Positions 1 through 10,969 of a stretch of DNA of 64,000 bases are shown here, piece by piece. The translations under genes were made by a program, and so were the position numbers. The notes beneath the pieces are model-generated. The model worked only from the letters and a program-made list of their open reading frames with translations, made no database searches and was not told the DNA's origin. Numbering within the stretch: position 1 is the first letter of the stretch; each line of letters begins with the position of its first letter. Source of the stretch: Diplonema japonicum (taxonomy: Eukaryota; Protista; Euglenozoa: Diplonemea); NCBI GenBank assembly GCA_964019335.1, contig OZ025726.1, forward strand, positions 1 through 64,000, in the 5' to 3' direction.

Positions 1-3000
1 CCCGACCTTAGCGGCGCGTTGGGCCGACTGGGTCTCGTGGGAAGGTACCCTTTTTCTGGCGACCTTTTCCCCGCCCTCTACCCGGACATCGGGGTTGGAG
101 GTTTCTGGGGTACTGACCTCCGGAGAGAGGCGCCCCCCGCCTTCAGCCCCCAGCACGGGAGACTGCGACGGACGAGCGGGCGAAGGCTCTCTGTCCACAC
201 CGGAGGGGGCCGAATGTGCCTCCATCCCGTCCGACTCGCACAGGTCCGCGGCCATGGACACCACGGGCGCCTCCGGGAACCTCGCCTCTGGAGAGTAGAG
301 CCCTGCACCGCTCGCCCCCGGAATGGGAGATTGCGCCGTTTCGCCTTCCTCCTGCGGCGGCCTGCTACCCACGGCCAAGGGGGTCAGGGAAGGGGGCGGA
401 ACCGCTCCGAACAGCACGCGCATGCCAGCGGCCAGGCTCGATTCTCTTACGTCCAGCTGGCCGCGACCCTTCTTCACTTTTGGGGTCCGCTGGGCGGACT
501 GAGCCTCATTCGAGGGCACCCTCTTCCTCGCCAGACCCCTGTTCCCACTGACCTCCGGCGAATCAATCTCGAGGGGCTCGGGCGCGGTCCCGTCCTCCAC
601 CGCCGCTCCCGTCTGGATGGGGGGCTCATTAGCTTCACCTTCCGCCTGGGCAGGGGACTCCCCTCCTTCCTCCTGGATGTGGGACTCATCACCCTCCGAC
701 TGAGTAGGGGATTCGCTATCCTCCACCTGGATGCTGGATCCACTGCCCTCCGTCTGAGTGGGGGACTCACCCACCTCCGCCTGGGTGGGAGACCCAGCCT
801 CCTCCTCCTGGGCGGGGAGCTCCCGGACATGGGACTCACCACCCTCCGCCTGGATAGGGGGTTCGACGCCTTCCGACTGGATGGGGGACTCCTCCTCCCC
901 GTCCGCCTCGAAGAGAACCCGCGCCACGTAAACTTCGTCTGACTCTAGTTGGACTGGGAACCAGGGGCGGACCGCAGGCCCCCTGACGTCCAGCAACGCT
1001 GGGTGCCTCTGTACCTTGGGATCCCTCTGGGCGGACAGGGCCTCGTTGGACGGGACCCTCTTCCTCACCAGGCTTTCCCCGATGGCTCCCACAAGCGTCA
1101 CGGACGGTGTGTTCCCCGTGCTCCTGGCCTCCGGAGAGCCTGACTCACGGTCTCCCCCAAGCCTTGCCCTGTCCCCCTCCGACGAAGGGGGGCCTCGGGC
1201 AGCCCCTTCCAACACCGCCGCCACAATGGGGGAGTCGCACCCTCCTCCGAGCACCGACTGGGAGGCCCTTGGGGTTAGCACCGCCGCTCCCTGTGAGGGT
1301 TGTGTCGTCCCCAGGCCGCTTTCTCCCGCGGGTACAGGAGAGAAGACATCCGCCTCCAGGATCGCCATGATCTGCTCCCTAGAGAACGCGCCCAGCCCGG
1401 TCCGCTCCACCTCCTGGCTCACCGCCGCTGGCGGGCCTCCGGCTTCTGCCGCTTCCAGATCGGGGCTCCCTTCGTCCTCCCTCATCGGGCTGGCCGACCC
1501 GGGTGACTCCGAACCTCCCTCCCCTCCGGCGCTCTGCAACTCTGCGTCCCCTTCTCCGACCCCGGGGCCTTCGCTGCTGGACTCTGGGGCGGACGAGAGG
1601 ACTTCCTCCATCGAAGATGACGGTGAGGGCCCCCCCTCCCCTTCCTGCGGCCCCTGCCACGACATCTGGTCGTCCTCCCTTCCCGAGGGGGACGGAGAGA
1701 GGGGAAACTGGTGGTTGCTCGGTTCTCCACTTACCTCAGCCCGTCCCTCGAGCAGGAGTGGCCCCATAGGCTCATCCCCCTCTGATGCCTGTGGCGGGGT
1801 TAGGCCCCCCTCAACCTCCGTCTGGACCGTCCCCTGCGAGCCCTCCTCCTCCATTCCTTCGGGCAATACGGCTTGGATGGTGTTTTCTGTGCCAGTGTTC
1901 CCCTCTGATGCCTGCGGCGGAGTCAGGCCCCCCTCAACCTCCATCCGGTCCGTTCCCTGCGCGTCCTCCTCCTCCATTCCTTCAGGCAATGCGGCTTGGA
2001 TGGTGTTTTCTGTGCCAGTGTTGCCCTCCGAGGAGGAGTCGGAGGCGTCCGACTGAGACGTCCCCTCCATGGGTTCCCCACCCTCTATCGAATCACTCTT
2101 CTCCTCCTCCTCCTCCACGGACATGTCGGTCGGGCCCACCTCCTCCGCCGGGGTGGAGGTGTATCCCAGCGACGTCCCTCCGCCCTGCCCATCCCCGCTC
2201 TCTTCCGTGTCCTCCTCCATCAAGCCGGGCTCCTCCTCCTGAGGACTTCCCTCCCCCATGGACAAGTCGGCTGTTTCGTTTTCTTTAGAACCTGAGATGT
2301 CCACCCGCGGGGCAGCGGGGCCTGCCTGCGGGACCCACCCTTCTGCGAGCGAGCTCCCTGCCGTATCATCCTCCATCGCGTCGGGGCTGGAGACGTCTGG
2401 TAGCGGCACTGCCTCCCAGGGCTCCCTCACCTCCGTCGCGTCAGGGGTCCCCCCCTCCCCCGCGGGGGCCAAGTCCGTCCCTCCGACGACCGGGGGGGCG
2501 GCGGGGATGTCCGCCTGCGGAGCACCGCCCTCCAGCCCGTCCTCGCTTTCCACCTCCATCAAGCCGAAGTCCTCCCCCTGCAATGAGAGAGGGCCTGTCT
2601 GCAACTCCGCCTGCTCCTCTGGCATGTCCTCTGCCGGGTCCTCCTCCATCGCGCTGGGGCCATCCTGCGTCGTGCACACTTCCTCCTCTCCAGCGGGCAT
2701 GTCGGCTGATTCGGTTTTTGTCGTGCCTGACGCGTCCTCCGTCGAGGGTGGGGGGGCGCCCGCTGCCTGGGCTTCCTCGTCTCCTGGGCCATCGGGGGGG
2801 ATGTCTGGGGCCGGGGGTGGGTCGGGCGGTGCTTGTGTCTCTTTGATCGGGTGCCTCCTCCTCGTCTCCACTGCCACCTCTCTCATGAGGGCTACGCTCA
2901 GTTCCTCTGTCATGGTCCTATAGACCTCCGTCGCGTCCCGCTGCCTCTTCTTCGCCACCTCCGCCGCGATCCTCTTCAGCACCCTCCTGGCGTCGGTCCC

Positions 3001-6000
3001 GAACCCGCCAAACGTCTCCAGAGCACAGGGGGTGAACCGTATCCGGGCTCTCTCGCAGTCGCTCGCGTACTTCGCCCGCTTCGACTCCGCCTGTTTCTCC
3101 GCAGCCGCCCCCGGAACCGCCATTGCCGCCGCCAGGTGGGCGCTCGCACACGGGTGGACCACCGTCACGTCGATGGCCAGAGGGCCCTCGCCTTCCACCC
3201 CCATCGGGAGGTAAACGTCAGCAGGCTTCCTCCCGTCACCCAGGAGGCCTTGTTGCTCCTTCACCGCTTGCAACCCGCCGCTGTAGCAGTGCTTCACCAA
3301 CATGTCCCTCACCCTGTCGTGCCTCTTCGTCATGACCGCACCTCTCTTGCAAACCATGGCATGGTCGCCTAGTGCGTCGTTGTCCTCACCGCACATCGGG
3401 CACTTCCCCTCGGACCCGACTGCGGTGCCAAGGAGCCAGCTGGTCAGCGTCCTGAACTCATCGTTCTTTAGTTCGTTATTCAAGCCCGTGATCGCCGTCA
3501 GCCAAGCCCCTGCTTTGTGAACCTTCAGCGAGTTCAACCTGGCCTTGTCCCTACCACCCGGGGAGCTCCCGAACAGCGCACCCCAGGACTTCTCCTCGAG
3601 GATCTGCGACATCTTCCTCTGAGGGTACAGCCTCGGGGTGTTTCGCAGCAGGTCCACGGAGAGCCTATCAGGATCGTCGGCTGCGAGGTGGCCGTTGAAC
3701 CACTCGACCCCCCACTCCCAGCCACCCGCCAGTGAAGCGTCCCAGTCGTACCCCCCCAGGATCTCCGACGCCAGCTCCTGGGTCGCCGCCAGCGAGGCCA
3801 TGTTCGCCACTAGGGCGTGTTCGCTGCAGCTGCGAAGGCCCATCCCTCCCCTCCTCGTCGCAAGCTTCGCCTGGCTCCACTCCCTCTCCCCGAGCTCCCG
3901 GGCAAGAAGGTGCTCCATCGCCCCCTTCACCAGGCCGTCGAATTCCGTCAAGGGGCCCGCTAGCTGCGTGTGCGGTACCGTGCGCATGAGGTGGACCATC
4001 TTGCTGTACGAGCTGCAGTTCTTCACCAAGGCGTAGCCCGACTGGGTCCTCATCTTCTTCTGCATCTCGAAGGTCTTGCCCAGGGCCTCGAGCTTCTTTG
4101 CCAAGAAGGCCTTCGTGTACTCCGCGTCCCCTATGGGGGTCCCCAGGAGCTCGAAGTTCCCATCCGAGCTCATTTTCTCCTTGGAGAAACCGGAGAAGCC
4201 CCACTCTTCTGGGTCGGTCGGCTTCTCACCAGACACCCAGATCAACTCGCACTTCTGCGGCTTCACCTTCAGGCCTCGCTTCGCCGACTCCTCTACCACG
4301 ATGCGGTAGGCCTTCTCCACCTGTCCCCTCTCTCCGGCCAGGAACCCGTCATCGAGGTAGAAGAACTGGAGGTCCAGACTTGTATCCGCCCTTATCTTCT
4401 CCAGTACTGGCTGCAGCGCGAGGGAGAACAGCAACGGACCCACCGGGTCGCCCTGCTGGACCCCCTCCCTCGAGAGTAGCTCCGTCCCCTCGTGGAACAG
4501 CTTGGATGGGTGTCTGTAGCAAGATTCGGCCCACTTGTACCCCTTGGGAACCTTCGCGCACGCCTCCTTTAGCATCTCGTACCTGCTGATTGTGTTGAAG
4601 GCGTTTGCGTAGTCTATCTTGATCGCCACTCGGGATACGTCGTCCTGTTTCGCCTTCTCCACGTACTGCCTTGTCGCGTGGACAGCCGCCTCCATCCCCG
4701 CGGGGACCGCCACCCCGATCTGGCCCCCCTTCCTCAGGTAGGACTTGGCCACTTCCGCCCCTTCCTTGTCAAGGATTGCCTTCCCTACAAGTCGTCTCAG
4801 GCTCTCTCCTACGGCGATCGGACGGACTCCCCTGTCCGGTTTCCGCAGCGGAATCAAGCTCGCCCCTAGTAGCACCGGTGCCACCTCAGCCGGAGTCTGA
4901 CCTCTGGCCATGATATTGCACACCTCGGTGAGAGCCGCCAGGGCCCCTACTTCCGTCACCACGCCGTCCACCCCGTCCTTCAGGTGTTGGGCGCTCAACC
5001 CAGTCGGCCCAGCCGCTTTCCCCTTGTCAAAGTCCCGGACCATGCTCAGAACGTCGACGGCCGTGACGTCCTCGAAGGAGTCAGCCGGATTCAGTTCTAG
5101 CCCCGAGGGGTCAACCGATGCCTCAGGGTGGAGGCCCAGGAGCTTCTCGAAGGTCTCGGTGGAGTCCTCCGCCAACCCTCCCGCAGTTAGCGCTGCGTTG
5201 GCTCTGGAGAAGCGCCCATCCCTGCACAGCGTCTCCCCTCTCTTCAGCCTGGATTCGTCGTCTGGATCCTTCGAGACTCTCTTCTCCGATAGGGGGACTC
5301 CGTTCCACACCTGCTGGTACTCCCCTCTGATCCAGGCCTCCAACTTCTGCTTGGCGCTGCTCTCCCCGGACTTCCGACGTGCCTTTCCACCCCTGCGTCT
5401 GCCCAGGCAAGCCTTCGGAAGCATCAGGAGCAGCACCCACGACAGGTAGGAGTTCTCCTGCTTCACCCTCACCAGTGCCGTCTTCAGCGCCAGACTCCAC
5501 AACCCTTGGAGCGGGACGGGGATGTGCTTCATGAGGCCCACTTTCCGGGTGGCCACCTCCTCCAGAGAAGGAAGTGCGTCCCGGCTAGGGGCCGCCTTCA
5601 CATCCACGGGACCCCCAGGAGCGCTGTACCTGGCGATGCACCTGACGTGAGCCGCCTCCCGTTCGCCCACCACCGACCCACACACGCAGGTCTTGAGGCC
5701 AAGCTTCTTCAGCTCCTGCGGGAGTACCTCCTCGTCCAGCAGGTGGTCGTTCAAGTGGGACTTCAGCAGTTCCCACCCCAAGATCGCCGGGCCTCCCATG
5801 TGGGACGACCTCTCGCACCCCCTCACCGGGCACTGGAAACTCCTGACCTTGCTGTCCAGTCGTGGGGCATCCTTCATGTGGTGTCCGTTGGGCCTGATGG
5901 AGGACTCCGGCATCAGGAGGTGGGCGAGGTCCAGGATGGCGGGCCTGGTCCCCGAGGGGGCTAGCCTCGCCTCCACCGCCCAATCCACCAGGGTGGACTT

Positions 6001-8891
6001 TCCGCCCTCCGAGACCAACACAGGCCTGTAGTGGGATCCCGTGAAGCCAAGCACCACCGTATCCTCCGGTTCCCTTGCCTCCCCGAGCTTCAAGACCTGG
6101 GCGTCACCCCCGGTCACGACCACGACCGTCTTTTGCCAGACCTCCACCGCCGCCTGCAGACAAAGGTGGTCCCCCCACTCCCCTTGCTTTGCCATGTAGT
6201 GGATGTAGGCCTCAAAACCGATCGGATCCACAAAGCTCTCGAACCTGCCCCTGTTGTCCCTTATGTGGTTGACCACCCGACTCCTCACCTCTCCGTGTCG
6301 TTCCTTCTCCCCCAGCAGCACCACCGCCAGAGAGCGGAACAAGCAATCCCCTCCGCCCCCAGCATCCTCCTCCTTGGCACCCACCTCGTGCAGGATCGAC
6401 TCCCTGGTGACAGACGAGCCCGATATCCCACGGACGAGGCGGGAGGGCTCCTTCTCGGGCTTGGGCCGGCAATTCACGCACCGCTCCTTGTTCCCCGCCG
6501 TGAACAGCACGCTGCACCCTCCGCAGATCGCGAAACCCATCGCCTTCGCGTTCTCTGGCGTGAGCTCTCCGGCGTGGGTCTTCGACAGGTGGTACTGCAA
6601 GCCCGCCTTCGACGAGTGCTCTTTCTTACCCTTCTCACACAGCAGGCACTCCCACACTCCGTCGGTCCTTCGGGAAGCCCCGGCCGTGCTCCTACTGGTG
6701 GCGGGGGGGCCTCCGGCTGCGCCTGGGGGCGGAGGCGGGGGTGGGGGTTGGGAAAGCGTTGCTCCGCCTTTGAGCGAGGAGGCTTCTAAGGGGAGGGGGG
6801 GCACGGGGCTCCGATAGACCACCCTGGTATAGGGCCCCCAACGTCTCCTGGCCACCCACCTCTTCCTCGCAAGGTGTTTCCCGGCCCTCGACCTGATGGC
6901 CCTCCTGGCCATCGCAGCCCTCTCCTCCGCTTCCGCTATCCCGATGAGCCGGGCTGCAACAGCTGGAGGGGCGGGACCGCACCCCTTCTTCTTGCAGGCT
7001 TCCCTTTCCCTCCTCTTCTCGACCCTTCTCTGGCGGTGCAGCCTCCTCCGCTCCCTGTCAGCGATTTCCCTAGCCTTCTCCCTGGCCTGGGCCCTCTCCT
7101 CGCGGCGCCTTTGGAGGGTGGCCTCGCTACGGTGTCTCCTCCTCCGGCCCTTCGTCACCGTCTGCCTCGTCTTCCGGGGTCCCGGGGCCAACCAGGGTAC
7201 TCCCCCTCCATTCCTCCCCTGCGGGGCGCGCTCCGGCTTCCATCTTTCCTCCTGGGCCACCGCCCCCACCACCCCCTGGAGGGTGGTGGAAACGGGGGCC
7301 AGGACCCCCCTCCTGTTAGTGAGTGTGGGTGTGTTTTTTTGTTTATTTTCCACCCTCAAAAAAAGTCCCGGACCCATTCGGATCCGGGTGTAAAGGGGGG
7401 GTGACAATGGGGGGGCCGAAGGGGCGCTAACCTCTCTAGGGAGAGCACCCTTCTCTTTTTTCTTCTTATCCTCCTTCTGGGAGGAAACAAAGGGGGGGGA
7501 ATCCACTTGGGGGGGGTTTGCAAGGGGGGGATTTACAAGAGGGGGGACAGATAAACCATAAATAGAAGAAGCAGAGGAAGGGGCGCTACCCTCTCTCGGG
7601 AGTGCACCCTTCCCTTTTTTTTTTTTCTTATCCTCCTCCTGGGAGGGAACAAAGGGGGGGGGATCTACAAGGGGGGGGTTTACAAGGGGGGAATTTACAA
7701 GAGGGGGGACAGATAAACAAGAGAAAGAAGAAAAAGAAGAAGCGGAGGAAGGGGGGGAGTTTACAAGAGGGGAGACAGATAATCCAGAGATAGAAGAAGC
7801 AGAGGAAGGGGCGCTACCCTCTCTCGGGAGTGCACCCTTACCTATTTTTTTCTTGTCCTCCCCCTGGGAAGAAACAAAGGGGGGGGAATCTACAATGGGG
7901 GGGTTTACAAGGGGGGAATTTACAAGAGGGGGGACAGATAAACAAGAGAAAGAAGAACAAGAAGAAGCGGAGGAAGGGGGGGAAGGGGCGCCTCCCTCTC
8001 TCGGGGACACCTCCTTCGCACTCTCTTTCCTTCTCCCCACAAACACAGTTTTTTTTTTTTCTATTTCCTCCACAGAGGACACAGAGGGGGAGGGGAGGGG
8101 CACGGGGCAGCCAACCGTCCGCAGGGTGATCGACACCCTGGAGCCCGAAGAACACCCTTCGGGGATGTGGTGGGTCCATTCGTAGCGGGCCTACCCTCCA
8201 GAATGGCCCAGGTGAAGGGAGGCACCAGGTACTTCGATACCCTGGACCCCTTCTTCAGGACCATCGTGGTCTCTGCGCCGTACGAGAGGATGAGGACCAC
8301 TGGTCCCAACCTCACGTCGTCGGTGTGGTGGGCGATTCCACACCCAGGCTCGTATCGATTTACGAGCACCTGGTCTGGGGTGATCCCCAGCCCCGCTGCG
8401 GTGGCCACCTCCGCCACCCAACCCCTGGCCCCCTCTGGGATCGGGGTGGTGCGGCGCACTTTGGCACGGGCACCCACCCACCTGAAACCAAATTGGAGGG
8501 TTTCCCTCCCTTTGTTCCCCGAAATGGACTCCCACCCCCCCGAGAGCAAGGTCTCTGGGTGGGTGGGAGCTGGGCCTGTTCTTAAGCCCGGGGGGTGGTC
8601 CCCTCCCGTGAGCACCCACCCTCCTTCTTTCTTTTTTTCCCCCCTCTCAGTCTTCAGGCGGGTGGCGGTGGCGGCTGCGGAATCGGGAGCGGGCGCGCTG
8701 GCTGCGGGTGGTTCTATTTTTTTATGTTTTTTATTATTTTTTACGACATCTAGAGGGGATCTAAGGGGAGGGGAGGGGTCATACTGCCCGGCCAGATTTC
8801 GGTCTGGTCGGGTGGTCGGCTTGGTCGGCGTCTCTCGTAGGCGTTCCTCCTGCGGGCGGCGGTCTCCGACGACGTTTCGTCTAGGGTCCAT
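1..8891 (-). CDS. Retrotransposon polyprotein: AlkB - S/P repeats - C2H2/C4 zinc fingers - OTU protease - C2H2 - RT - CCHC/RLE - acidic tail (one frameshift near 8190; no stop inside the window)
   Basis: ATG at 8891 (track ORF 8061..8891) encodes the AlkB N-half. The adjacent frame is open from 8190 down to position 1: I translated much of it by hand, and the ORF track lists no terminated ORF in this frame. It carries the AlkB C-half, OTU, RT and RLE in one frame. Confidence 0.85.
600..900 (-). repeat. ~27-bp coding tandem repeat (ESP[I/T]Q[A/S]EG-like, about 11 copies)
   Basis: Recurrent ctccgcctggatgggggactc-like units, in frame with the polyprotein. Confidence 0.75.
1777..2027 (-). repeat. 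123-bp tandem duplication in the polyprotein tail
   Basis: cccctctgatgcctg..ggatggtgttttctgtgccagtgtt occurs twice with a 41-codon period. Confidence 0.85.
6015..6360 (-). CDS. OTU-family cysteine protease/deubiquitinase domain within the polyprotein
   Basis: GGGDCLFRSLAVVL (catalytic Cys codon 6343-6345), YIHYMAKQGEWGDHLCLQAA, and LGFTGSHYRPVL (catalytic His). Same frame as YLDD. Confidence 0.9.
7418..8010 (-). repeat. ~160-230-bp coding tandem repeats (about 3.2 units)
   Basis: Unit anchor gaaggggcgct(a)ccctctctcggga at ~7418, 7576, 7804 and 7981. It translates in frame as PREGSAPSSASS..LSVPPLVNxPLVNPPxVDSPPFVSSQxEDKKKK. Confidence 0.85.
8118..8510 (-). CDS. AlkB-like 2OG-Fe(II) dioxygenase domain within the polyprotein
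   Basis: RETLQFG...PDQVLVNRYEPGCGIAHHTD (HxD)...ILSYG...LEG/ARYEWTHHI (distal His)...RVSITLR (RxxxxxR). All canonical AlkB metal and 2OG ligands are present once the frameshift is bridged. Confidence 0.88.
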
Positions 8892-9032
8892 TTTTATTTT
8901 TTTTTTTTTTGTGTTGAGGGGGGAGGGGATCCTTTGCTAAACGGCAGGCGGGCCGGGCCGAAACAACCCCCCCAGACGACGACGAACGGACACCGAGCGG
9001 ACGCAGCAGGCACCAACAAAAACACAGACGAC

Positions 9033-9071
9033 CAATAAAGTACAGAAACTGTAGCTTTAGAATCGTTGGTT
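9033..9071 (-). ncRNA. SL: Spliced-leader (mini-exon) sequence, 39 nt, diplonemid-type
   Basis: Minus strand reads AACCAACGATTCTAAAGCTACAGTTTCTGTACTTTATTG followed by GT. The 3' part CAGTTTCTGTACTTTATTG is the conserved kinetoplastid/diplonemid SL end, and an AACC start is the Diplonema type. Confidence 0.93.
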
Positions 9072-9076
9072 TTTTT

Positions 9077-9290
9077 TAAAAAGGGGGACTTGAGAATGTT
9101 TTTTTTTTTTTTTTTCTTCAAAAGACACACAAGGCACGATAAATCTTAAGAGAAAATAAAAATATTCCAAAACAGACAATCAAGTTCCAACCTGGGAGGA
9201 AGGCATGGGTTTCTCTTTTTCTTTATGGGAGGGAGAGGGGAAGAAGAAGAAGCAACTCCAAATGATAAAAATTCAAAAATAAAAATCTCA
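9077..9290. repeat. ~212-bp direct repeat, copy 1
   Basis: Nearly identical to 10759-10969; differs in T-run length and one G/C substitution. Confidence 0.95.
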
Positions 9291-9791
9291 AAAAAGGCTT
9301 AAAAGAAGAAGAGGCAAATTCAAAAACATACTAGGGAGGAATGAGTGGGGCAGGGGGTAAAATTTAGGAGGGGGAAAGAGGGAGAATCAAAAAAGGGGAA
9401 AGGGGCAGAGTGGCCAATGTCCATGCGAAAAAGCATAGAGCGGGGGAAGAAGAAAATCAAAAACAGGAAAAACACATCACCACAAAAGAAAAAAGAAAAA
9501 AAAAAAAAAAAAAAAAAAAAACGTCGACCGAGATGGTTCCACTTCAAAAAGAAAAAGAAAAAGAAAAACAGAAAAATAAAAAAAAAAAAAAAAAAAAGGA
9601 AAAACAAAAAGAAAAAAAAAAAAAGGAAAAAAAAAAAAAAATCTAAGTGGTTCTATCTAGCCTGGCCGTTGTAGCACCTGTTCCCTATTCTTTTATTTTT
9701 CCCTTTTTTTTTTTTCTCAGAAAAAAAAAAAAAAGTTTCACATCTTCCTATGGCGGGGGGGGGGAGAACAGCCCCCCACACCCCCGCTGGC

Positions 9792-10748
9792 CTATCTGGC
9801 CAGCGAGCCTTTGGACCTCTTCTTGTGGGGTATGGGCCCCACCCGTGCCCTCCCCGACTCGAGCTGCAGCCAAGCCACCGCACTGTTCACCGGGGCCCAG
9901 TTCTCCTTGTTGCGCACCTTGACCGTGTCCCGCACCAGGTCGTCGCTCCCCAGCTCTTCCATCAACCTGTGCTCCGCCAAGAACTTGAACTGGGGCCCGG
10001 TCATCCCCTTGAGCTCACCCCTGCATATGTTGGCTTCGACCACGGTGCCATCCGCCCCCGTACCCTTCAGATAGATGTAGCCACCCTCCACACAATCCGA
10101 GTCAGTACTGGCCGATCGGGCCCGGGCCCGCTTCTTGTCCTTCTTGCTCCACTTCAGCTCTTCCAGGGTGGGGAGATCCGTGGCAACCACCTCAGGCCGC
10201 CTCTCCCTGTCTTCCTCCTTCTTCCGGGCCAACAGCCCAAGGTACCTCTCAAAGGAGACGTCCTCGAACAACCCCGGGACCGTCACCACCGCTGACTGCA
10301 GGTCGACCTCTTCAACACCCATCTTCCGCAGATGGTCCTGGACAGTGCGCCTCGTCTCCTTCTCGCAGGGCCCCCTCCCCTCGTAGACGTCGAGGGTGAC
10401 CTTCCTTCCATCCCTCACCCACGCCTTCACTTTGATCAGGTCCTTGACCTTTCCCACTGGGGCCCTTATCCTTGCGTCGCACCTCTCCAAGAACTCACGT
10501 AGTGTCACCTTGGTAGCGCCGGCTCCCGCCGCAATGCCCACTACCCCTTCCTTCCCCGGTGTCGGGTGGTGTCTGCACCCCCGGGTCTGCAACTTGACCA
10601 CCCTCCATGCCGTTTCCAGAGTCCCCTTGAGCACGCCACCCTTGAAACGAACAGGTTGCACCGCCGAACACCCACACGCGTACGTGATCTGGAAATCCTG
10701 GACCGTCCTCGGGAACTCGAACTCGCGGTATGTTTCCGACTTCTGCTG
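9792..10748 (-). CDS. Orphan GC-rich ORF lacking a 5' ATG (~320 codons); possibly a fragment of the retroelement
   Basis: Track ORF 9792..10661 extends upstream in frame (QQKSETYREFEFPRTVQDF...) to a tttattttctcag site next to the repeat. Composition resembles the element. Confidence 0.55.
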   Translation of the reverse strand, partial: QQKSETYREFEFPRTVQDFQITYACGCSAVQPVRFKGGVLKGTLETAWRVVKLQTRGCRHHPTPGKEGVVGIAAGAGATKVTLREFLERCDARIRAPVGKVKDLIKVKAWVRDGRKVTLDVYEGRGPCEKETRRTVQDHLRKMGVEEVDLQSAVVTVPGLFEDVSFERYLGLLARKKEEDRERRPEVVATDLPTLEELKWSKKDKKRARARSASTDSDCVEGGYIYLKGTGADGTVVEANICRGELKGMTGPQFKFLAEHRLMEELGSDDLVRDTVKVRNKENWAPVNSAVAWLQLESGRARVGPIPHKKRSKGSLAR

Positions 10749-10758
10749 AGAAAATAAA

Positions 10759-10969
10759 TAAAAAGGGGGACTTGAGAATGTTTTTTTTTTTTTTCTTCAA
10801 AAGACACACAAGGCACGATAAATCTTAAGAGAAAATAAAAATATTCCAAAACAGACAATCAAGTTCCAACCTGCGAGGAAGGCATGGGTTTCTCTTTTTC
10901 TTTATGGGAGGGAGAGGGGAAGAAGAAGAAGCAACTCCAAATGATAAAAATTCAAAAATAAAAATCTCA
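10759..10969. repeat. ~212-bp direct repeat, copy 2
   Basis: taaaaagggggacttgagaatg...aataaaaatctca, matching 9077-9290. Confidence 0.95.

What the first reader, a model, noticed from the sequence alone, without database searches (positions are those of the whole stretch)
1..8891. Giant CRE-clade retrotransposon whose polyprotein carries both an AlkB dioxygenase and an OTU protease
Seen in sequence: apart from one 1-nt shift, a continuous minus-strand frame of more than 2,900 codons encodes AlkB (intact HxD..H..RxxxxxR), zinc fingers, OTU (intact Cys and His), CRE-type RT (QQGDP, YLDD) and an RLE endonuclease. Established: the CRE1/SLACS/CZAR elements I know carry zinc fingers, RT and RLE, while the AlkB+OTU pairing is characteristic of some plant RNA virus replicases (Betaflexiviridae). 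Inference: the element carries its own counter-defence kit, removing methyl marks or damage from its RNA/cDNA and removing ubiquitin or self-processing. I do not know of this architecture in a non-LTR element. The ORF track misses it because the frame has no stop in the window.
Basis: partly seen in the sequence, partly recalled or inferred. Interest (0 to 1): 0.95.

Follow-up and report, generated by a model that had tools for sequence, protein, structure and literature searches.

The report
Chromosome-end retrotransposon carrying AlkB and OTU
This is a real, recently active 10.7-kb jumping gene of a diplonemid protist whose single giant protein joins an AlkB-type nucleic-acid demethylase and an OTU protease to the usual copying and cutting enzymes, a combination I could not find described for this class of element.

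Summary
Window 1-9071 (minus strand) is one copy of a 10,659-bp non-LTR retrotransposon. The contig end cuts off its last 1,579 bp.

- **The frame shift.** The 1-nt shift is a deletion found in the window copy alone among the copies compared. Intact natural copies encode one 2,990-aa protein.
- **Domain order.** AlkB, Arg-rich linker, zinc finger, OTU, zinc finger, RT, CCHC plus restriction-like endonuclease, then a roughly 900-aa acidic tail.
- **Linkage.** Three diverged families in this genome, and proteins of Diplonema papillatum auto-named "SLACS 132 kDa protein" or ALKBH8-like, keep AlkB, OTU and RT in one frame. The catalytic residues are intact and AlkB is under purifying selection. 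Chance adjacency is excluded.
- **Life cycle and location.** Copies start at the 5' end of the spliced leader and end in poly(A), so the template is a mature trans-spliced mRNA. They crowd contig ends, mostly with the 3' end pointing outward. Some are cut short and capped by (GCAAACCC)n repeats. They do not sit in spliced-leader genes as CRE1, SLACS and CZAR do.

CRE-clade membership could not be tested by phylogeny. What AlkB and OTU do is inferred, not shown. I found no paper describing this architecture in a non-LTR element; AlkB is known in orchid Ty3/Gypsy elements and plant RNA viruses. Earlier notes of this scan on other DNA of this genome had already flagged AlkB-encoding, leader-capped retro-copies.

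The parts
1..9071 (-). One copy of the 'family 1' element. It is 3'-truncated by the contig end; the full unit is 10,659 bp.
   Evidence: 99.9% identical over 9,080 bp to head-to-tail units in C24 with a 10,659-bp period.
9033..9071 (-). Complete spliced-leader exon (ACCAACGATTCTAAAGCTACAGTTTCTGTACTTTATTG) forming the 5' end of the element.
   Evidence: Read. The same exon occurs about 220 times in the genome, followed by many unrelated sequences and preceded by unrelated sequences. It is therefore acquired by trans-splicing, not from a target gene.
8892..9032 (-). 5' UTR.
   Evidence: Lies between the leader exon and the first ATG. It is 77-85% conserved in the other families.
8107..8618 (-). 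AlkB-type 2OG/Fe(II) dioxygenase domain (aa 92-262 of the intact protein).
   Evidence: Pfam PF13532 scores 39.1 bits against a cut-off of 31.2 in the intact copy. In a 44-sequence alignment N, Y, the HxD motif, the distal H and the first R of RxxxxxR are invariant, and the second R is kept in at least 90%. The AlphaFold model has pLDDT 91.9, and the top PDB folds are ALKBH6 and ALKBH8.
8190..8194 (-). Private 1-nt deletion that splits the AlkB domain in this copy only.
6673..8106 (-). Linker: three tandem repeats of about 75 aa rich in Pro and Ser, then an Arg-rich stretch.
   Evidence: The Arg-rich stretch is conserved in family 2.
6574..6648 (-). C2H2-like zinc finger 1 (aa 749-773).
   Evidence: Regular-expression match. 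The equivalent finger is conserved in family 2 and in Diplonema. There is no Pfam hit.
5998..6387 (-). OTU cysteine protease / deubiquitinase domain (aa 836-965).
   Evidence: Pfam PF02338 scores 42.1 bits against a cut-off of 23.3. PDB OTUD3 matches at 1.4e-7 with the catalytic Cys aligned. Cys and His are kept in family 2 and in Diplonema.
5743..5832 (-). C2H2-like zinc finger 2 (aa 1021-1050).
   Evidence: conserved in family 2 and in Diplonema.
4033..4845 (-). Reverse transcriptase core (aa 1350-1620).
   Evidence: Pfam RVT_1 at 1e-18. R2 proteins in the PDB match at 1.6e-8.
3013..3402 (-). CCHC motif and restriction-like (PD-(D/E)xK) endonuclease.
   Evidence: The motif is C-x2-C-x9-H-x3-C-x8-RHD-x19-E-x9-KPAD-x15-D. 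The H..C, R..RH, E, RP and D of the RPAD block, D and K columns are at least 80% conserved in an alignment with 18 relatives. The SLACS/CRE consensus is quoted in PMC12857005.
1..2652 (-). Acidic, Gly/Ser/Pro-rich C-terminal tail (aa 2081 onward) with internal repeats and three RKRVPS(N/H)E..SAQR motifs. It runs off the window.
   Evidence: It aligns poorly with family 2 (28% identity). Diplonema and family 2 also have long tails.
9078..10969 (-). Two stacked 5'-truncated 3' fragments of a 'family 2' element, ending in poly(A) directly upstream of the family 1 leader.
   Evidence: 98% identical to family 2 nt 7586-9252 and 9038-9264.

Best explanation
Window 1-9071 (minus strand) is a copy of an autonomous non-LTR retrotransposon of a diplonemid protist. 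It is of the type that carries a restriction-like endonuclease (RLE), as the CRE/R2 group does.

Shown here:
- One 2,990-aa polyprotein carries, in order: an AlkB-family dioxygenase, an Arg-rich linker, a zinc finger, an OTU-family cysteine protease/deubiquitinase, a second zinc finger, the reverse transcriptase, a CCHC motif with the RLE, and a long acidic tail.
- This arrangement is kept in three diverged families of this genome and in Diplonema papillatum.
- The catalytic residues are intact and AlkB is under purifying selection.
- Copies start at the 5' end of the spliced leader and end in poly(A). The retrotransposition template is therefore a mature, trans-spliced, polyadenylated mRNA.
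- Copies accumulate in stacks at contig ends. Of the copies that keep the RT, most point their 3' end outward. Some outermost copies are cut short and capped by terminal (GCAAACCC)n repeats.

Inferred:
- Integration is by target-primed reverse transcription from a nick made by the RLE, in or next to terminal repeats and A/T runs of resident copies.
- The AlkB domain acts in cis on the element's own RNA or single-stranded cDNA. It removes base methyl groups that would stall the reverse transcriptase or mark the RNA. One specific candidate is the base-methylated cap-proximal nucleotides that spliced leaders carry in kinetoplastids.
- The OTU domain cuts the polyprotein, removes ubiquitin-like marks from it, or both, as OTU-like proteases do in RNA-virus replicases.
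For: Architecture and linkage:
- The intact ORF carries PF13532, PF02338 and PF00078.
- Family 2 has the same domains, and tblastn is collinear at 42-45% identity as far as the endonuclease.
- The genome census gives 77 RT matches, all belonging to three families, and 108 AlkB matches. AlkB and RT share one uninterrupted frame in C24 (3,005 codons), C16 (2,967), C9 (2,884), C31 (2,826), C97 (2,700) and, for family 3, C18 (1,951).
- Diplonema proteins P0272 and P0273 carry all three domains. P0272 is 35% identical over 1,263 aa and 42% identical in AlkB.

Function retained:
- Between families 1 and 2 the AlkB core is 72% identical with dN/dS 0.23, against 55% and 0.25 for the RT.
- AlkB catalytic residues: Asn, Tyr, the His-x-Asp motif, the distal His and the first Arg are invariant, and the second Arg is kept in at least 90% of rows.
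- The AlkB fold is confirmed.
- The OTU domain aligns to OTUD3 and OTUD5 with the catalytic Cys in register.

RNA template:
- The leader sits at the exact 5' end and poly(A) at the 3' end.
- The sequence upstream of the leader is unrelated from copy to copy.
- One copy (C8) has the leader plus a second copy of its last 16 nt. That is the pattern expected if a parent transcript was re-spliced at the AG inside an integrated leader.

Location:
- Searches place most copies within about 10-15 kb of contig ends.
- About 65 of the 77 RT matches point outward.
- 3'-truncated copies are capped by terminal repeats in C3, C90 and C47.
- 5'-truncated copies are stacked head to tail.

Background for the cap idea: kinetoplastid cap 4 has a dimethylated adenine at position 1 and 3-methyluridine at position 4 (PMC13069679).
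Against: - No enzymatic or expression evidence. The one transcriptome-like run (X7) covers the element only in patches, and its kind is not on record.
- The closest solved AlkB relatives are ALKBH6, ALKBH8 and Ofd2, not the classical m1A/m3C repair enzymes. The substrate is therefore open.
- Whether diplonemid leaders carry cap-4-type base methylation is not known to me. Position 4 of this leader is C, not U.
- Against family 3, AlkB (52%) is less conserved than the RT (62%). The lower dS in AlkB between families 1 and 2 (0.9 against about 1.5) could reflect exchange between the families.
- No target-site duplication or clean empty site was found, so the integration target is not defined.
- 3'-end fragments occur in both orientations.
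Confidence: 0.75

Rival explanations
1. Same element, but AlkB and OTU work against the host rather than on the template. AlkB would erase regulatory methyl marks (m6A on RNA or 6mA on DNA) that silence or destabilise the element or its target chromatin. OTU would strip ubiquitin or ubiquitin-like marks that target the protein for destruction.
For: The AlkB fold also matches ALKBH5 and the NMAD-1 / ALKBH4 type enzymes. An orchid Ty3/Gypsy-encoded AlkB is an active m6A RNA demethylase (PMC9289625). The OTU domain is most like cellular deubiquitinases OTUD3, OTUD5 and OTUD1. A related RLE-type protein in the databases carries a UCH deubiquitinase domain (P0106).
Against: Nothing here tells it apart from template repair, and the two readings are not exclusive.
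Confidence: 0.3
2. The families are not merely parasites but part of chromosome-end maintenance, like HeT-A/TART/TAHRE in Drosophila. On this reading the arrays buffer the ends and the host tolerates or depends on them.
For: Three families occupy a large share of contig ends in a mostly uniform orientation. Outermost copies are eroded and re-capped by terminal repeats. Copies are near-identical (99.6-100%).
Against: Long terminal simple-repeat arrays exist, including about 1.4 kb at C110, so a repeat-adding system is present. The element keeps an endonuclease. Many copies are frameshifted or truncated. Accumulation in gene-poor subtelomeres is the usual fate of tolerated transposons.
Confidence: 0.12
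3. AlkB and OTU are host genes or assembly artefacts that merely lie next to an RT.
For: None beyond the frameshift in the window copy.
Against: The frameshift is private to the window copy. A single open frame is seen in many copies of three families and in another species. The leader-to-poly(A) unit contains all the domains.
Confidence: 0.01

Closest known systems
CRE-group non-LTR retrotransposons (CRE1/CRE2, SLACS, CZAR) and their telomere-associated relatives MoTeR, FoTeR and Cnl1
   Same: One ORF with N-terminal zinc fingers, an RT, then a CCHC motif and a PD-(D/E)xK restriction-like endonuclease whose motif spacing is close to the SLACS/CRE consensus. No LTRs. A euglenozoan host, as for SLACS, CZAR and CRE. 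Chromosome-end location, as for MoTeR and FoTeR (PMC12857005). The Diplonema homologues are auto-named SLACS. The sense strand is collinear with the C-rich repeat strand, as I infer for MoTeR and FoTeR from their reported 5'-end-to-terminus orientation (PMC12857005) and canonical telomere polarity.
   Different: It has about 1,250 extra N-terminal residues with AlkB and OTU, plus a tail of about 900 aa, giving 2,990 aa against roughly 1,150-1,200. It is not inserted in spliced-leader genes. It carries a whole leader at its own 5' end instead. It has a poly(A) tail. Full copies point their 3' end to the terminus, whereas FoTeR and MoTeR point their 5' end there. RT-tree membership was not tested.
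[quoted passage not shown]
   Same: RLE-type non-LTR elements whose single protein carries a cysteine protease of the ubiquitin-like-modifier world upstream of the RT (PMC4640811).
   Different: The protease family differs (Ulp1/C48 against OTU). They have no dioxygenase and use other targets (nematode leader genes, U2 snRNA genes).
Orchid Ty3/Gypsy (Ogre/Tat) elements with an AlkB ORF
   Same: A retrotransposon that has fixed an AlkB-family domain. That one was shown in vitro to be an m6A RNA demethylase (PMC9289625).
   Different: It is an LTR element, the AlkB sits in a separate extra ORF, the acquisition is recent and plant-derived, and there is no OTU.
Replicases of Betaflexiviridae and related plant RNA viruses (AlkB followed by OTU/papain-like protease)
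   Same: A polyprotein of a replicating RNA element that carries AlkB upstream of an OTU-type protease. The presumed logic is the same: repair or unmark the RNA, then process or deubiquitinate. This comparison rests on my own knowledge of that literature.
   Different: Here the polymerase is an RT with an endonuclease rather than an RdRp with a helicase. AlkB and OTU are about 580 aa apart. No specific sequence kinship to the viral domains was found.

Membership tests
Non-LTR retrotransposon, RLE-bearing | RT domain of the non-LTR type in a long ORF | tested here: met
   RVT_1 at 1e-18. R2 proteins are the only PDB hits. There are 272 relatives at 30-35% identity covering RT and endonuclease.
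Non-LTR retrotransposon, RLE-bearing | CCHC motif and PD-(D/E)xK endonuclease C-terminal to the RT | tested here: met
   Motifs and spacing. Conserved columns in a 19-sequence alignment. Consensus quoted from PMC12857005. No HMM or fold test was done; a phmmer run on aa 1861-2080, which starts downstream of the CCHC and RHD motifs, found nothing in the PDB.
Non-LTR retrotransposon, RLE-bearing | No LTRs, a 3' poly(A), 5'-truncated copies | tested here: met
CRE clade (CRE1/2, SLACS, CZAR) | RT groups with CRE-clade references in a phylogeny | not testable with these tools
   No named CRE, SLACS or CZAR sequences could be fetched. The only hint is the automatic name 'SLACS 132 kDa protein' on Diplonema homologues.
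CRE clade (CRE1/2, SLACS, CZAR) | Site-specific insertion within the spliced-leader exon of leader RNA genes (from my own knowledge: between nt 11 and 12) | tested here: not met
   Copies carry a whole leader at their 5' end and none at the 3' end. The sequence upstream of the leader is poly(A) of another copy, terminal repeats or unrelated DNA.
Telomere-associated CRE relatives (MoTeR, FoTeR, Cnl1) | Confined to chromosome ends and joined to telomere repeats in a fixed orientation | tested here: inconclusive
   Strong enrichment at contig ends with a dominant orientation. Some 5' ends abut (GCAAACCC)n directly. However, a few copies are internal, 3' fragments occur in both orientations, and no precise target is defined.
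AlkB family (2OG/Fe(II) dioxygenase) | Pfam PF13532 above the gathering score | tested here: met
   39.1 bits (family 1) and 51.9 bits (family 2) against a cut-off of 31.2.
AlkB family (2OG/Fe(II) dioxygenase) | HxD...H iron triad and the 2OG-binding N, Y and RxxxxxR residues | tested here: met
   N178, Y180, H189, D191, H241 and R252 are invariant across 44 sequences, and R258 is kept in at least 90%. The iron triad and RxxxxxR are kept in Diplonema.
AlkB family (2OG/Fe(II) dioxygenase) | Double-stranded beta-helix fold matching solved AlkB homologues | tested here: met
   Model pLDDT 91.9. The best Foldseek hits shown are AlkB-family proteins: ALKBH6 at 4e-11, then ALKBH8, Ofd2, NMAD-1, ALKBH5, ALKBH2, ALKBH3 and E. 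coli AlkB.
AlkB family (2OG/Fe(II) dioxygenase) | Oxidative demethylase activity and its substrate | not testable with these tools
   Needs a biochemical assay.
OTU cysteine protease / deubiquitinase | Pfam PF02338 above the gathering score, with catalytic Cys and His present | tested here: met
   42.1 and 47.6 bits against a cut-off of 23.3. Cys850 aligns with the OTUD3 and OTUD5 catalytic Cys. The His in GSHY is conserved in family 2 and in Diplonema.
OTU cysteine protease / deubiquitinase | Isopeptidase or self-cleaving activity | not testable with these tools
   Needs a biochemical assay.
Plant-virus AlkB-OTU replicase module | Specific sequence kinship of AlkB and OTU to the viral domains | tested here: inconclusive
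   The best AlkB relatives are unnamed metagenomic proteins of 170-270 aa scoring at most 83 bits. The best solved OTU relatives are cellular. No viral sequence was compared directly.

The most novel reading that the evidence does not exclude
The AlkB domain exists because these elements copy spliced-leader-capped mRNAs. It would strip the base methyl groups of the hypermodified leader cap region, or other Watson-Crick-blocking methyl groups, from its own template so that the RT can reach the very 5' end. That would regenerate a leader-bearing DNA copy which can be re-spliced. Together with the OTU domain, this would make a lineage-specific retrotransposition machinery that builds the chromosome ends of diplonemids, next to terminal repeats whose strand polarity is the reverse of canonical telomeres.
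Probability: 0.15. Interest if true: 0.9.

Novelty: new variant of a known kind. Interest (0 to 1): 0.68.

Why it matters
Non-LTR retrotransposons are thought to travel light, with an RT, an endonuclease and sometimes an RNA-binding ORF. Here a nucleic-acid dioxygenase and a deubiquitinase-type protease have been kept in the polyprotein across at least two diplonemid species. The dioxygenase is conserved about as well as the RT.

- **Convergence.** This is a third, independent case, after plant RNA viruses and orchid LTR elements, of a replicating RNA element fixing AlkB. It suggests that base methylation of RNA or cDNA is a general barrier to such elements.
- **A testable system.** The organism's mRNAs all carry a modified spliced leader, and the element demonstrably copies that leader into DNA. 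This gives a concrete place to test what the dioxygenase does.
- **Annotation.** The 'dozen AlkB homologues' counted in the Diplonema papillatum genome paper (PMC10161547), and proteins named ALKBH8-like methyltransferase or SLACS protein, are at least partly these elements.
- **Chromosome ends.** The elements dominate chromosome ends in a group of very abundant marine protists whose telomere biology is unknown.

Tried and rejected
- **RT phylogeny against CRE, R2, R4, NeSL and HERO.** Not possible. No named reference sequences were reachable. Homology hits were unnamed metagenome, dinoflagellate and tardigrade proteins, and the ESM Atlas gave only 'hypothetical protein, RVT_1' clusters.
- **Full-length search for the same architecture.** It found only one Diplonema RT-only protein. 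The architecture was found instead through an exhaustive AlkB profile search followed by cluster look-up.
- **Metagenome scan with the AlkB profile.** 504 pattern matches, none confirmed.
- **Rfam on the window.** No RNA family match.
- **Expression.** All runs offered were contigs of unrecorded kind. Run X7 looks like a transcriptome (leader depth about 89,000 against about 6 on the element body), but this is not proof.
- **Programmed frameshift or mini-intron at 8190.** Rejected. It is a deletion seen in this copy only.
- **Leader at the 5' end as target-derived or as a leader-gene intron.** Rejected. The flanks are unrelated between copies, and the sequence after the leader differs from the abundant leader-plus-'GTGTCCGACC...' units.
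- **PDB sequence search of the stretch downstream of the CCHC and RHD motifs (aa 1861-2080).** Nothing significant.
Full report

Yes. Translating window 8190->1 on the minus strand gives 2,730 codons without a stop. Window 8891->8064 is a 276-aa ORF that starts with ATG. Pfam finds 2OG-FeII_Oxy_2 in the upstream piece, and OTU and RVT_1 in the long frame.

The region is 61-67% GC up to about 7,000, falls to about 57% around 7,000-8,500, and is 42-55% beyond the element. A stop-free frame of this length cannot arise by chance.

**2. The frameshift is private to this copy.**

A DNA search of the window's own genome (G000: 62.5 Mb, 132 contigs; the window is C79:1-64000) found at least a dozen copies of the 5' part at 95-100% identity (most at 99-100%). 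In fifteen copies from C24, C47, C93, C90, C3, C8, C91 and C43, the sequence at the 'shift' reads GGGTGAGG. The window alone reads GGGTAGG. Contigs of three public runs also carry the extra base.

Intact natural copies therefore exist. All later protein work used one of them by reference (L023 = C24:8001-18000, ORF 723-9695 minus, 2,990 aa).

**3. Extent of the element.**

C24 holds head-to-tail units with a period of 10,659 bp, and two of them are 100% identical. Aligning the window to them gives these boundaries:
- The 5' end is at about 9071.
- The ORF stops about 75 nt beyond window position 1.
- A 3' UTR of about 1.45 kb, AT-rich with long T and A runs, ends ...TTTTGGGTGCGG(A)n.
- The window copy lacks its last 1,579 bp only because the contig ends there.

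**4. Domains of the intact 2,990-aa protein.**

- **AlkB (aa 92-262).** Pfam 1.2e-9.
  - The best solved relative by sequence is ALKBH8 at 4.6e-8.
  - In a 44-sequence alignment N178, Y180, H189, D191, H241 and R252 are invariant, and R258 is kept in at least 90% of rows.
  - An AlphaFold model has mean pLDDT 91.9.
  - Its best PDB matches shown are AlkB-family proteins: ALKBH6 at 4e-11, then ALKBH8, Ofd2, NMAD-1, ALKBH5, ALKBH2, ALKBH3 and E. coli AlkB.
- **Linker.** Three tandem Pro/Ser-rich repeats, then an Arg-rich stretch.
- **Two C2H2-like fingers** (aa 749 and aa 1021) flank the OTU domain.
- **OTU (aa 836-965).** Pfam 1.5e-10. OTUD3 matches at 1.4e-7 with the catalytic Cys in register.
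- **RT.** RVT_1 at 1e-18. The only solved relatives are R2 proteins.
- **CCHC plus endonuclease.** The motif reads C-x2-C-x9-H-x3-C-x8-RHD-x19-E-x9-KPAD-x15-D.
  - This is close to the SLACS/CRE consensus quoted in PMC12857005.
  - The key columns are conserved in an alignment with 18 relatives.
- **Tail.** About 900 aa rich in Glu, Gly, Ser and Pro, with three RKRVPS(N/H)E..SAQR motifs.

**5. Do AlkB and OTU always travel with the RT?**

Yes, in every lineage I could examine.

- **Family 2.** A second family in this genome is 42-45% identical at the protein level. It has AlkB (1.4e-13) and OTU (3e-12), followed by RT and endonuclease. The copy I read has a frameshift, but other copies do not.
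- **RT census.** The genome holds 77 RT matches. All are at least 50% identical, except one short 86-residue fragment at 37% (C28). All fall into three families.
- **AlkB census.** There are 108 AlkB matches, and only two or three of them look like ordinary host AlkB genes.
- **Single frames.** AlkB and RT lie in one uninterrupted frame of:
  - 3,005 codons (C24, twice)
  - 2,967 codons (C16)
  - 2,884 codons (C9)
  - 2,826 codons (C31)
  - 2,700 codons (C97)
  - 1,951 codons (C18, family 3)
- **Outside this genome.** An exhaustive profile search of 1.84 billion representative proteins with the AlkB core gave 2,149 hits, none better than 83 bits. Most are stand-alone proteins of 170-230 aa.
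- **Diplonema papillatum.** The few long hits are from this species.
  - P0140 (KAJ9446222.1) is named 'tRNA (carboxymethyluridine(34)-5-O)-methyltransferase'.
  - It shares a 90% cluster with P0272 (KAJ9442719.1, 2,635 aa) and P0273, both named 'Retrotransposable element SLACS 132 kDa protein'.
  - P0272 and P0273 carry AlkB, OTU and RVT_1 in the same order.
  - P0272 is 35% identical to family 1 over 1,263 aa and 42% identical in AlkB.
  - A second Diplonema lineage (P0280, P0135) has AlkB and OTU as well.

The architecture predates the split of these two diplonemids.

**6. Selection.**

Between families 1 and 2:

| Segment | aa identity | dN/dS (NG86) |
|---|---|---|
| AlkB core | 72% | 0.23 |
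| RT | 55% | 0.25 |
| OTU | 37% | 0.53 |
| Endonuclease | 36% | 0.57 |

There are two caveats. dS is near saturation. It is also lower in AlkB (0.9) than elsewhere (about 1.3-1.6), so exchange between the families is possible. Against family 3, AlkB (52%) is less conserved than the RT (62%). The safe statement is that AlkB is conserved about as well as the RT.

**7. Host organism and RNA template.**

The first 38-39 nt of the element are a euglenozoan spliced-leader exon. The evidence:
- The exon occurs about 220 times in the genome.
- It is followed by many unrelated sequences, including leader + short sequence + poly(A) retro-copies.
- It is preceded by unrelated sequences.
- In the elements it is preceded by the poly(A) of another copy, by terminal repeats or by unrelated DNA.

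The leader is therefore neither a target flank nor a leader gene. It was added to the element's transcript by trans-splicing and then copied into DNA.

Two variant copies are informative:
- The C8 copy has the leader followed by a second copy of its last 16 nt. That is the pattern expected if a parental integrated leader was re-spliced at its internal AG.
- A C3 copy has the leader joined to element nt 121.

The leader sequence and the Diplonema hits together indicate a diplonemid other than D. papillatum.

**8. Genomic location.**

Most hits of the 5' part, the RT and the AlkB domain lie either at coordinates below about 13 kb or near the high end of their contig. About 65 of the 77 RT matches are on the minus strand at low coordinates or on the plus strand at high coordinates. 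RT-bearing copies therefore mostly point their 3' end outward. Only about 4% of the genome lies within 10 kb of a contig end, so the enrichment is very strong.

The outermost copies in C3, C90 and C47 are 3'-truncated after element nt 2005, 2538 and 4895. Each is capped directly by (GCAAACCC)n at a different repeat phase.

5'-truncated copies are stacked head to tail. In the window, 9078-10969 holds two family 2 3' fragments that end in poly(A) right before the family 1 leader.

3'-end fragments also occur in the opposite orientation:
- At the C110 left end the order is about 1.4 kb of (GGGTTTGC)n, a 30-nt filler, family 1 nt 9795-10659, then poly(A)70 facing inward.
- In C56 and C45 the family 1 poly(A) abuts an antisense T tract of a family 2 3' UTR.

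I could not define a target site or a target-site duplication.

**9. Mechanism.**

*Shown:* a leader-capped, polyadenylated RNA is the template, the protein has every catalytic motif intact, and copies are young and pile up at chromosome ends.

*Inferred:* target-primed reverse transcription from an RLE nick in or near terminal repeats and A/T runs of resident copies.

- **AlkB.** The most economical reading is action in cis on the element's own RNA or cDNA. It would remove methyl groups that block base pairing or mark the RNA.
  - The host offers a specific candidate. In kinetoplastids the leader carries 'cap 4', with a dimethylated adenine at position 1 and 3-methyluridine at position 4 (PMC13069679). 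Both lie on the Watson-Crick face.
  - These elements do copy the leader to within one or two nucleotides of its 5' end.
  - Whether diplonemid leaders are so modified is unknown to me, and position 4 here is C.
  - The alternative, erasing regulatory m6A or 6mA as the orchid Gypsy AlkB may do (PMC9289625), fits the data equally well.
- **OTU.** It most resembles cellular deubiquitinases. By analogy with OTU-type proteases of RNA viruses it may process the 2,990-aa polyprotein, remove ubiquitin-like marks, or both.

**10. Comparison with known families.**

The backbone of zinc fingers, RT, CCHC and RLE, the euglenozoan host, and the end-of-chromosome habit all fit the CRE group and its telomeric relatives MoTeR, FoTeR and Cnl1 (PMC12857005). 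However:
- I could not place the RT in a tree.
- The defining behaviour of CRE1, SLACS and CZAR, insertion inside leader genes, is not met.

Cysteine proteases upstream of the RT are known in NeSL and Utopia, but those are Ulp1-like (PMC4640811). One related database protein carries a UCH domain (P0106). AlkB is known in plant RNA viruses and in one LTR-retrotransposon lineage.

Four full-text searches for AlkB together with non-LTR, OTU, SLACS or LINE terms found no description of AlkB in a non-LTR element. [quoted passage not shown]

I class this as a new variant of a known kind. Sequences of a sister lineage are public but unrecognised. Earlier first-reader notes of this scan, on other DNA of this genome, had already flagged AlkB-encoding, leader-capped retro-copies linked by telomere-like repeats.

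**11. Limits.**

- There are no expression or activity data. The sequencing runs offered were contigs of unrecorded kind.
- Many contig lengths are inferred from contig rank, not read.
- The metagenome scan was blank.

Noticed in passing
G000 contig ends: C1:1-384, C4:1-328, C110:~1-1430 (L030), C3:999806-999969 (L026), C47 end (L022), C90 end (L027): The terminal repeat is an 8-mer. It reads (GGGTTTGC)n on the plus strand at left ends and (GCAAACCC)n on the plus strand at right ends, so the strand that ends 3' at the terminus is the C-rich one. That is the reverse of canonical telomere polarity. There is no (TTAGGG)4 anywhere in the genome, and no paper holds the 8-mer in any rotation.
   Followed up: partly
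Genome-wide, e.g. G000:C20:670782, C51:127996, C17:633379, C52:245876: The spliced-leader exon is followed by a short sequence and then poly(A), so leader-capped processed retro-copies of other RNAs are scattered through the genome. Several abundant leader-headed repeat families also exist: leader + GTGTCCGACCGTGCCAATAAAG, + GGTGCATGGGGTGCTGGAAAAA, and + GTCGCTCCCCGTGGCTGATAAA. They are usually preceded by a T run.
   Followed up: no
L028 (C8:849397-849450) and L026:3797-3840 (C3:993.8 kb): Two variant 5' ends. One has the leader plus a duplicated last 16 nt (TTTCTGTACTTTATTG twice). The other has the leader joined to element nt 121. Both suggest that integrated leaders or downstream sites are re-used as trans-splice acceptors.
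   Followed up: partly
L026:2457-2560 (C3:992.4 kb): The leader plus the first 50 nt or so of the family 1 5' UTR is fused to an unrelated sequence of about 1.2 kb. The sequence has an antisense-looking coding composition. It could be a chimeric retro-copy or a template switch.
   Followed up: no
G000:C18:1336-5580, C48:378-4271, C31:612887, C116:127592, C8:844927-849137: A third family of the same architecture. Its RT is 60-62% identical and its AlkB 51-53% identical to family 1, and both lie in one open frame of up to 1,951 codons.
   Followed up: partly
Protein P0214 (JGI metagenome, 556 aa) and P0200 / P0231: Other AlkB fusions turned up among the profile hits. One has OTU followed by AlkB, the reverse order. 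One has an mRNA cap guanine-N7 methyltransferase plus AlkB. One has an FtsJ 2'-O-methyltransferase plus a DNA-methylase-like region plus AlkB. These look like virus- or mobile-element-like RNA-modification cassettes.
   Followed up: no
window 9300-9760: The family 2 3' UTR holds several perfect T runs of 15-30 nt. In C56 and C45 a family 1 poly(A) abuts such a run in antisense, so these runs may serve as integration sites.
   Followed up: partly
G000:C79:451342-451848: A family 2 AlkB copy in plus orientation lies far along the window's own contig, at about 451 kb. If that is near the contig's other end (its length was not read), both ends carry elements pointing outward.
   Followed up: no
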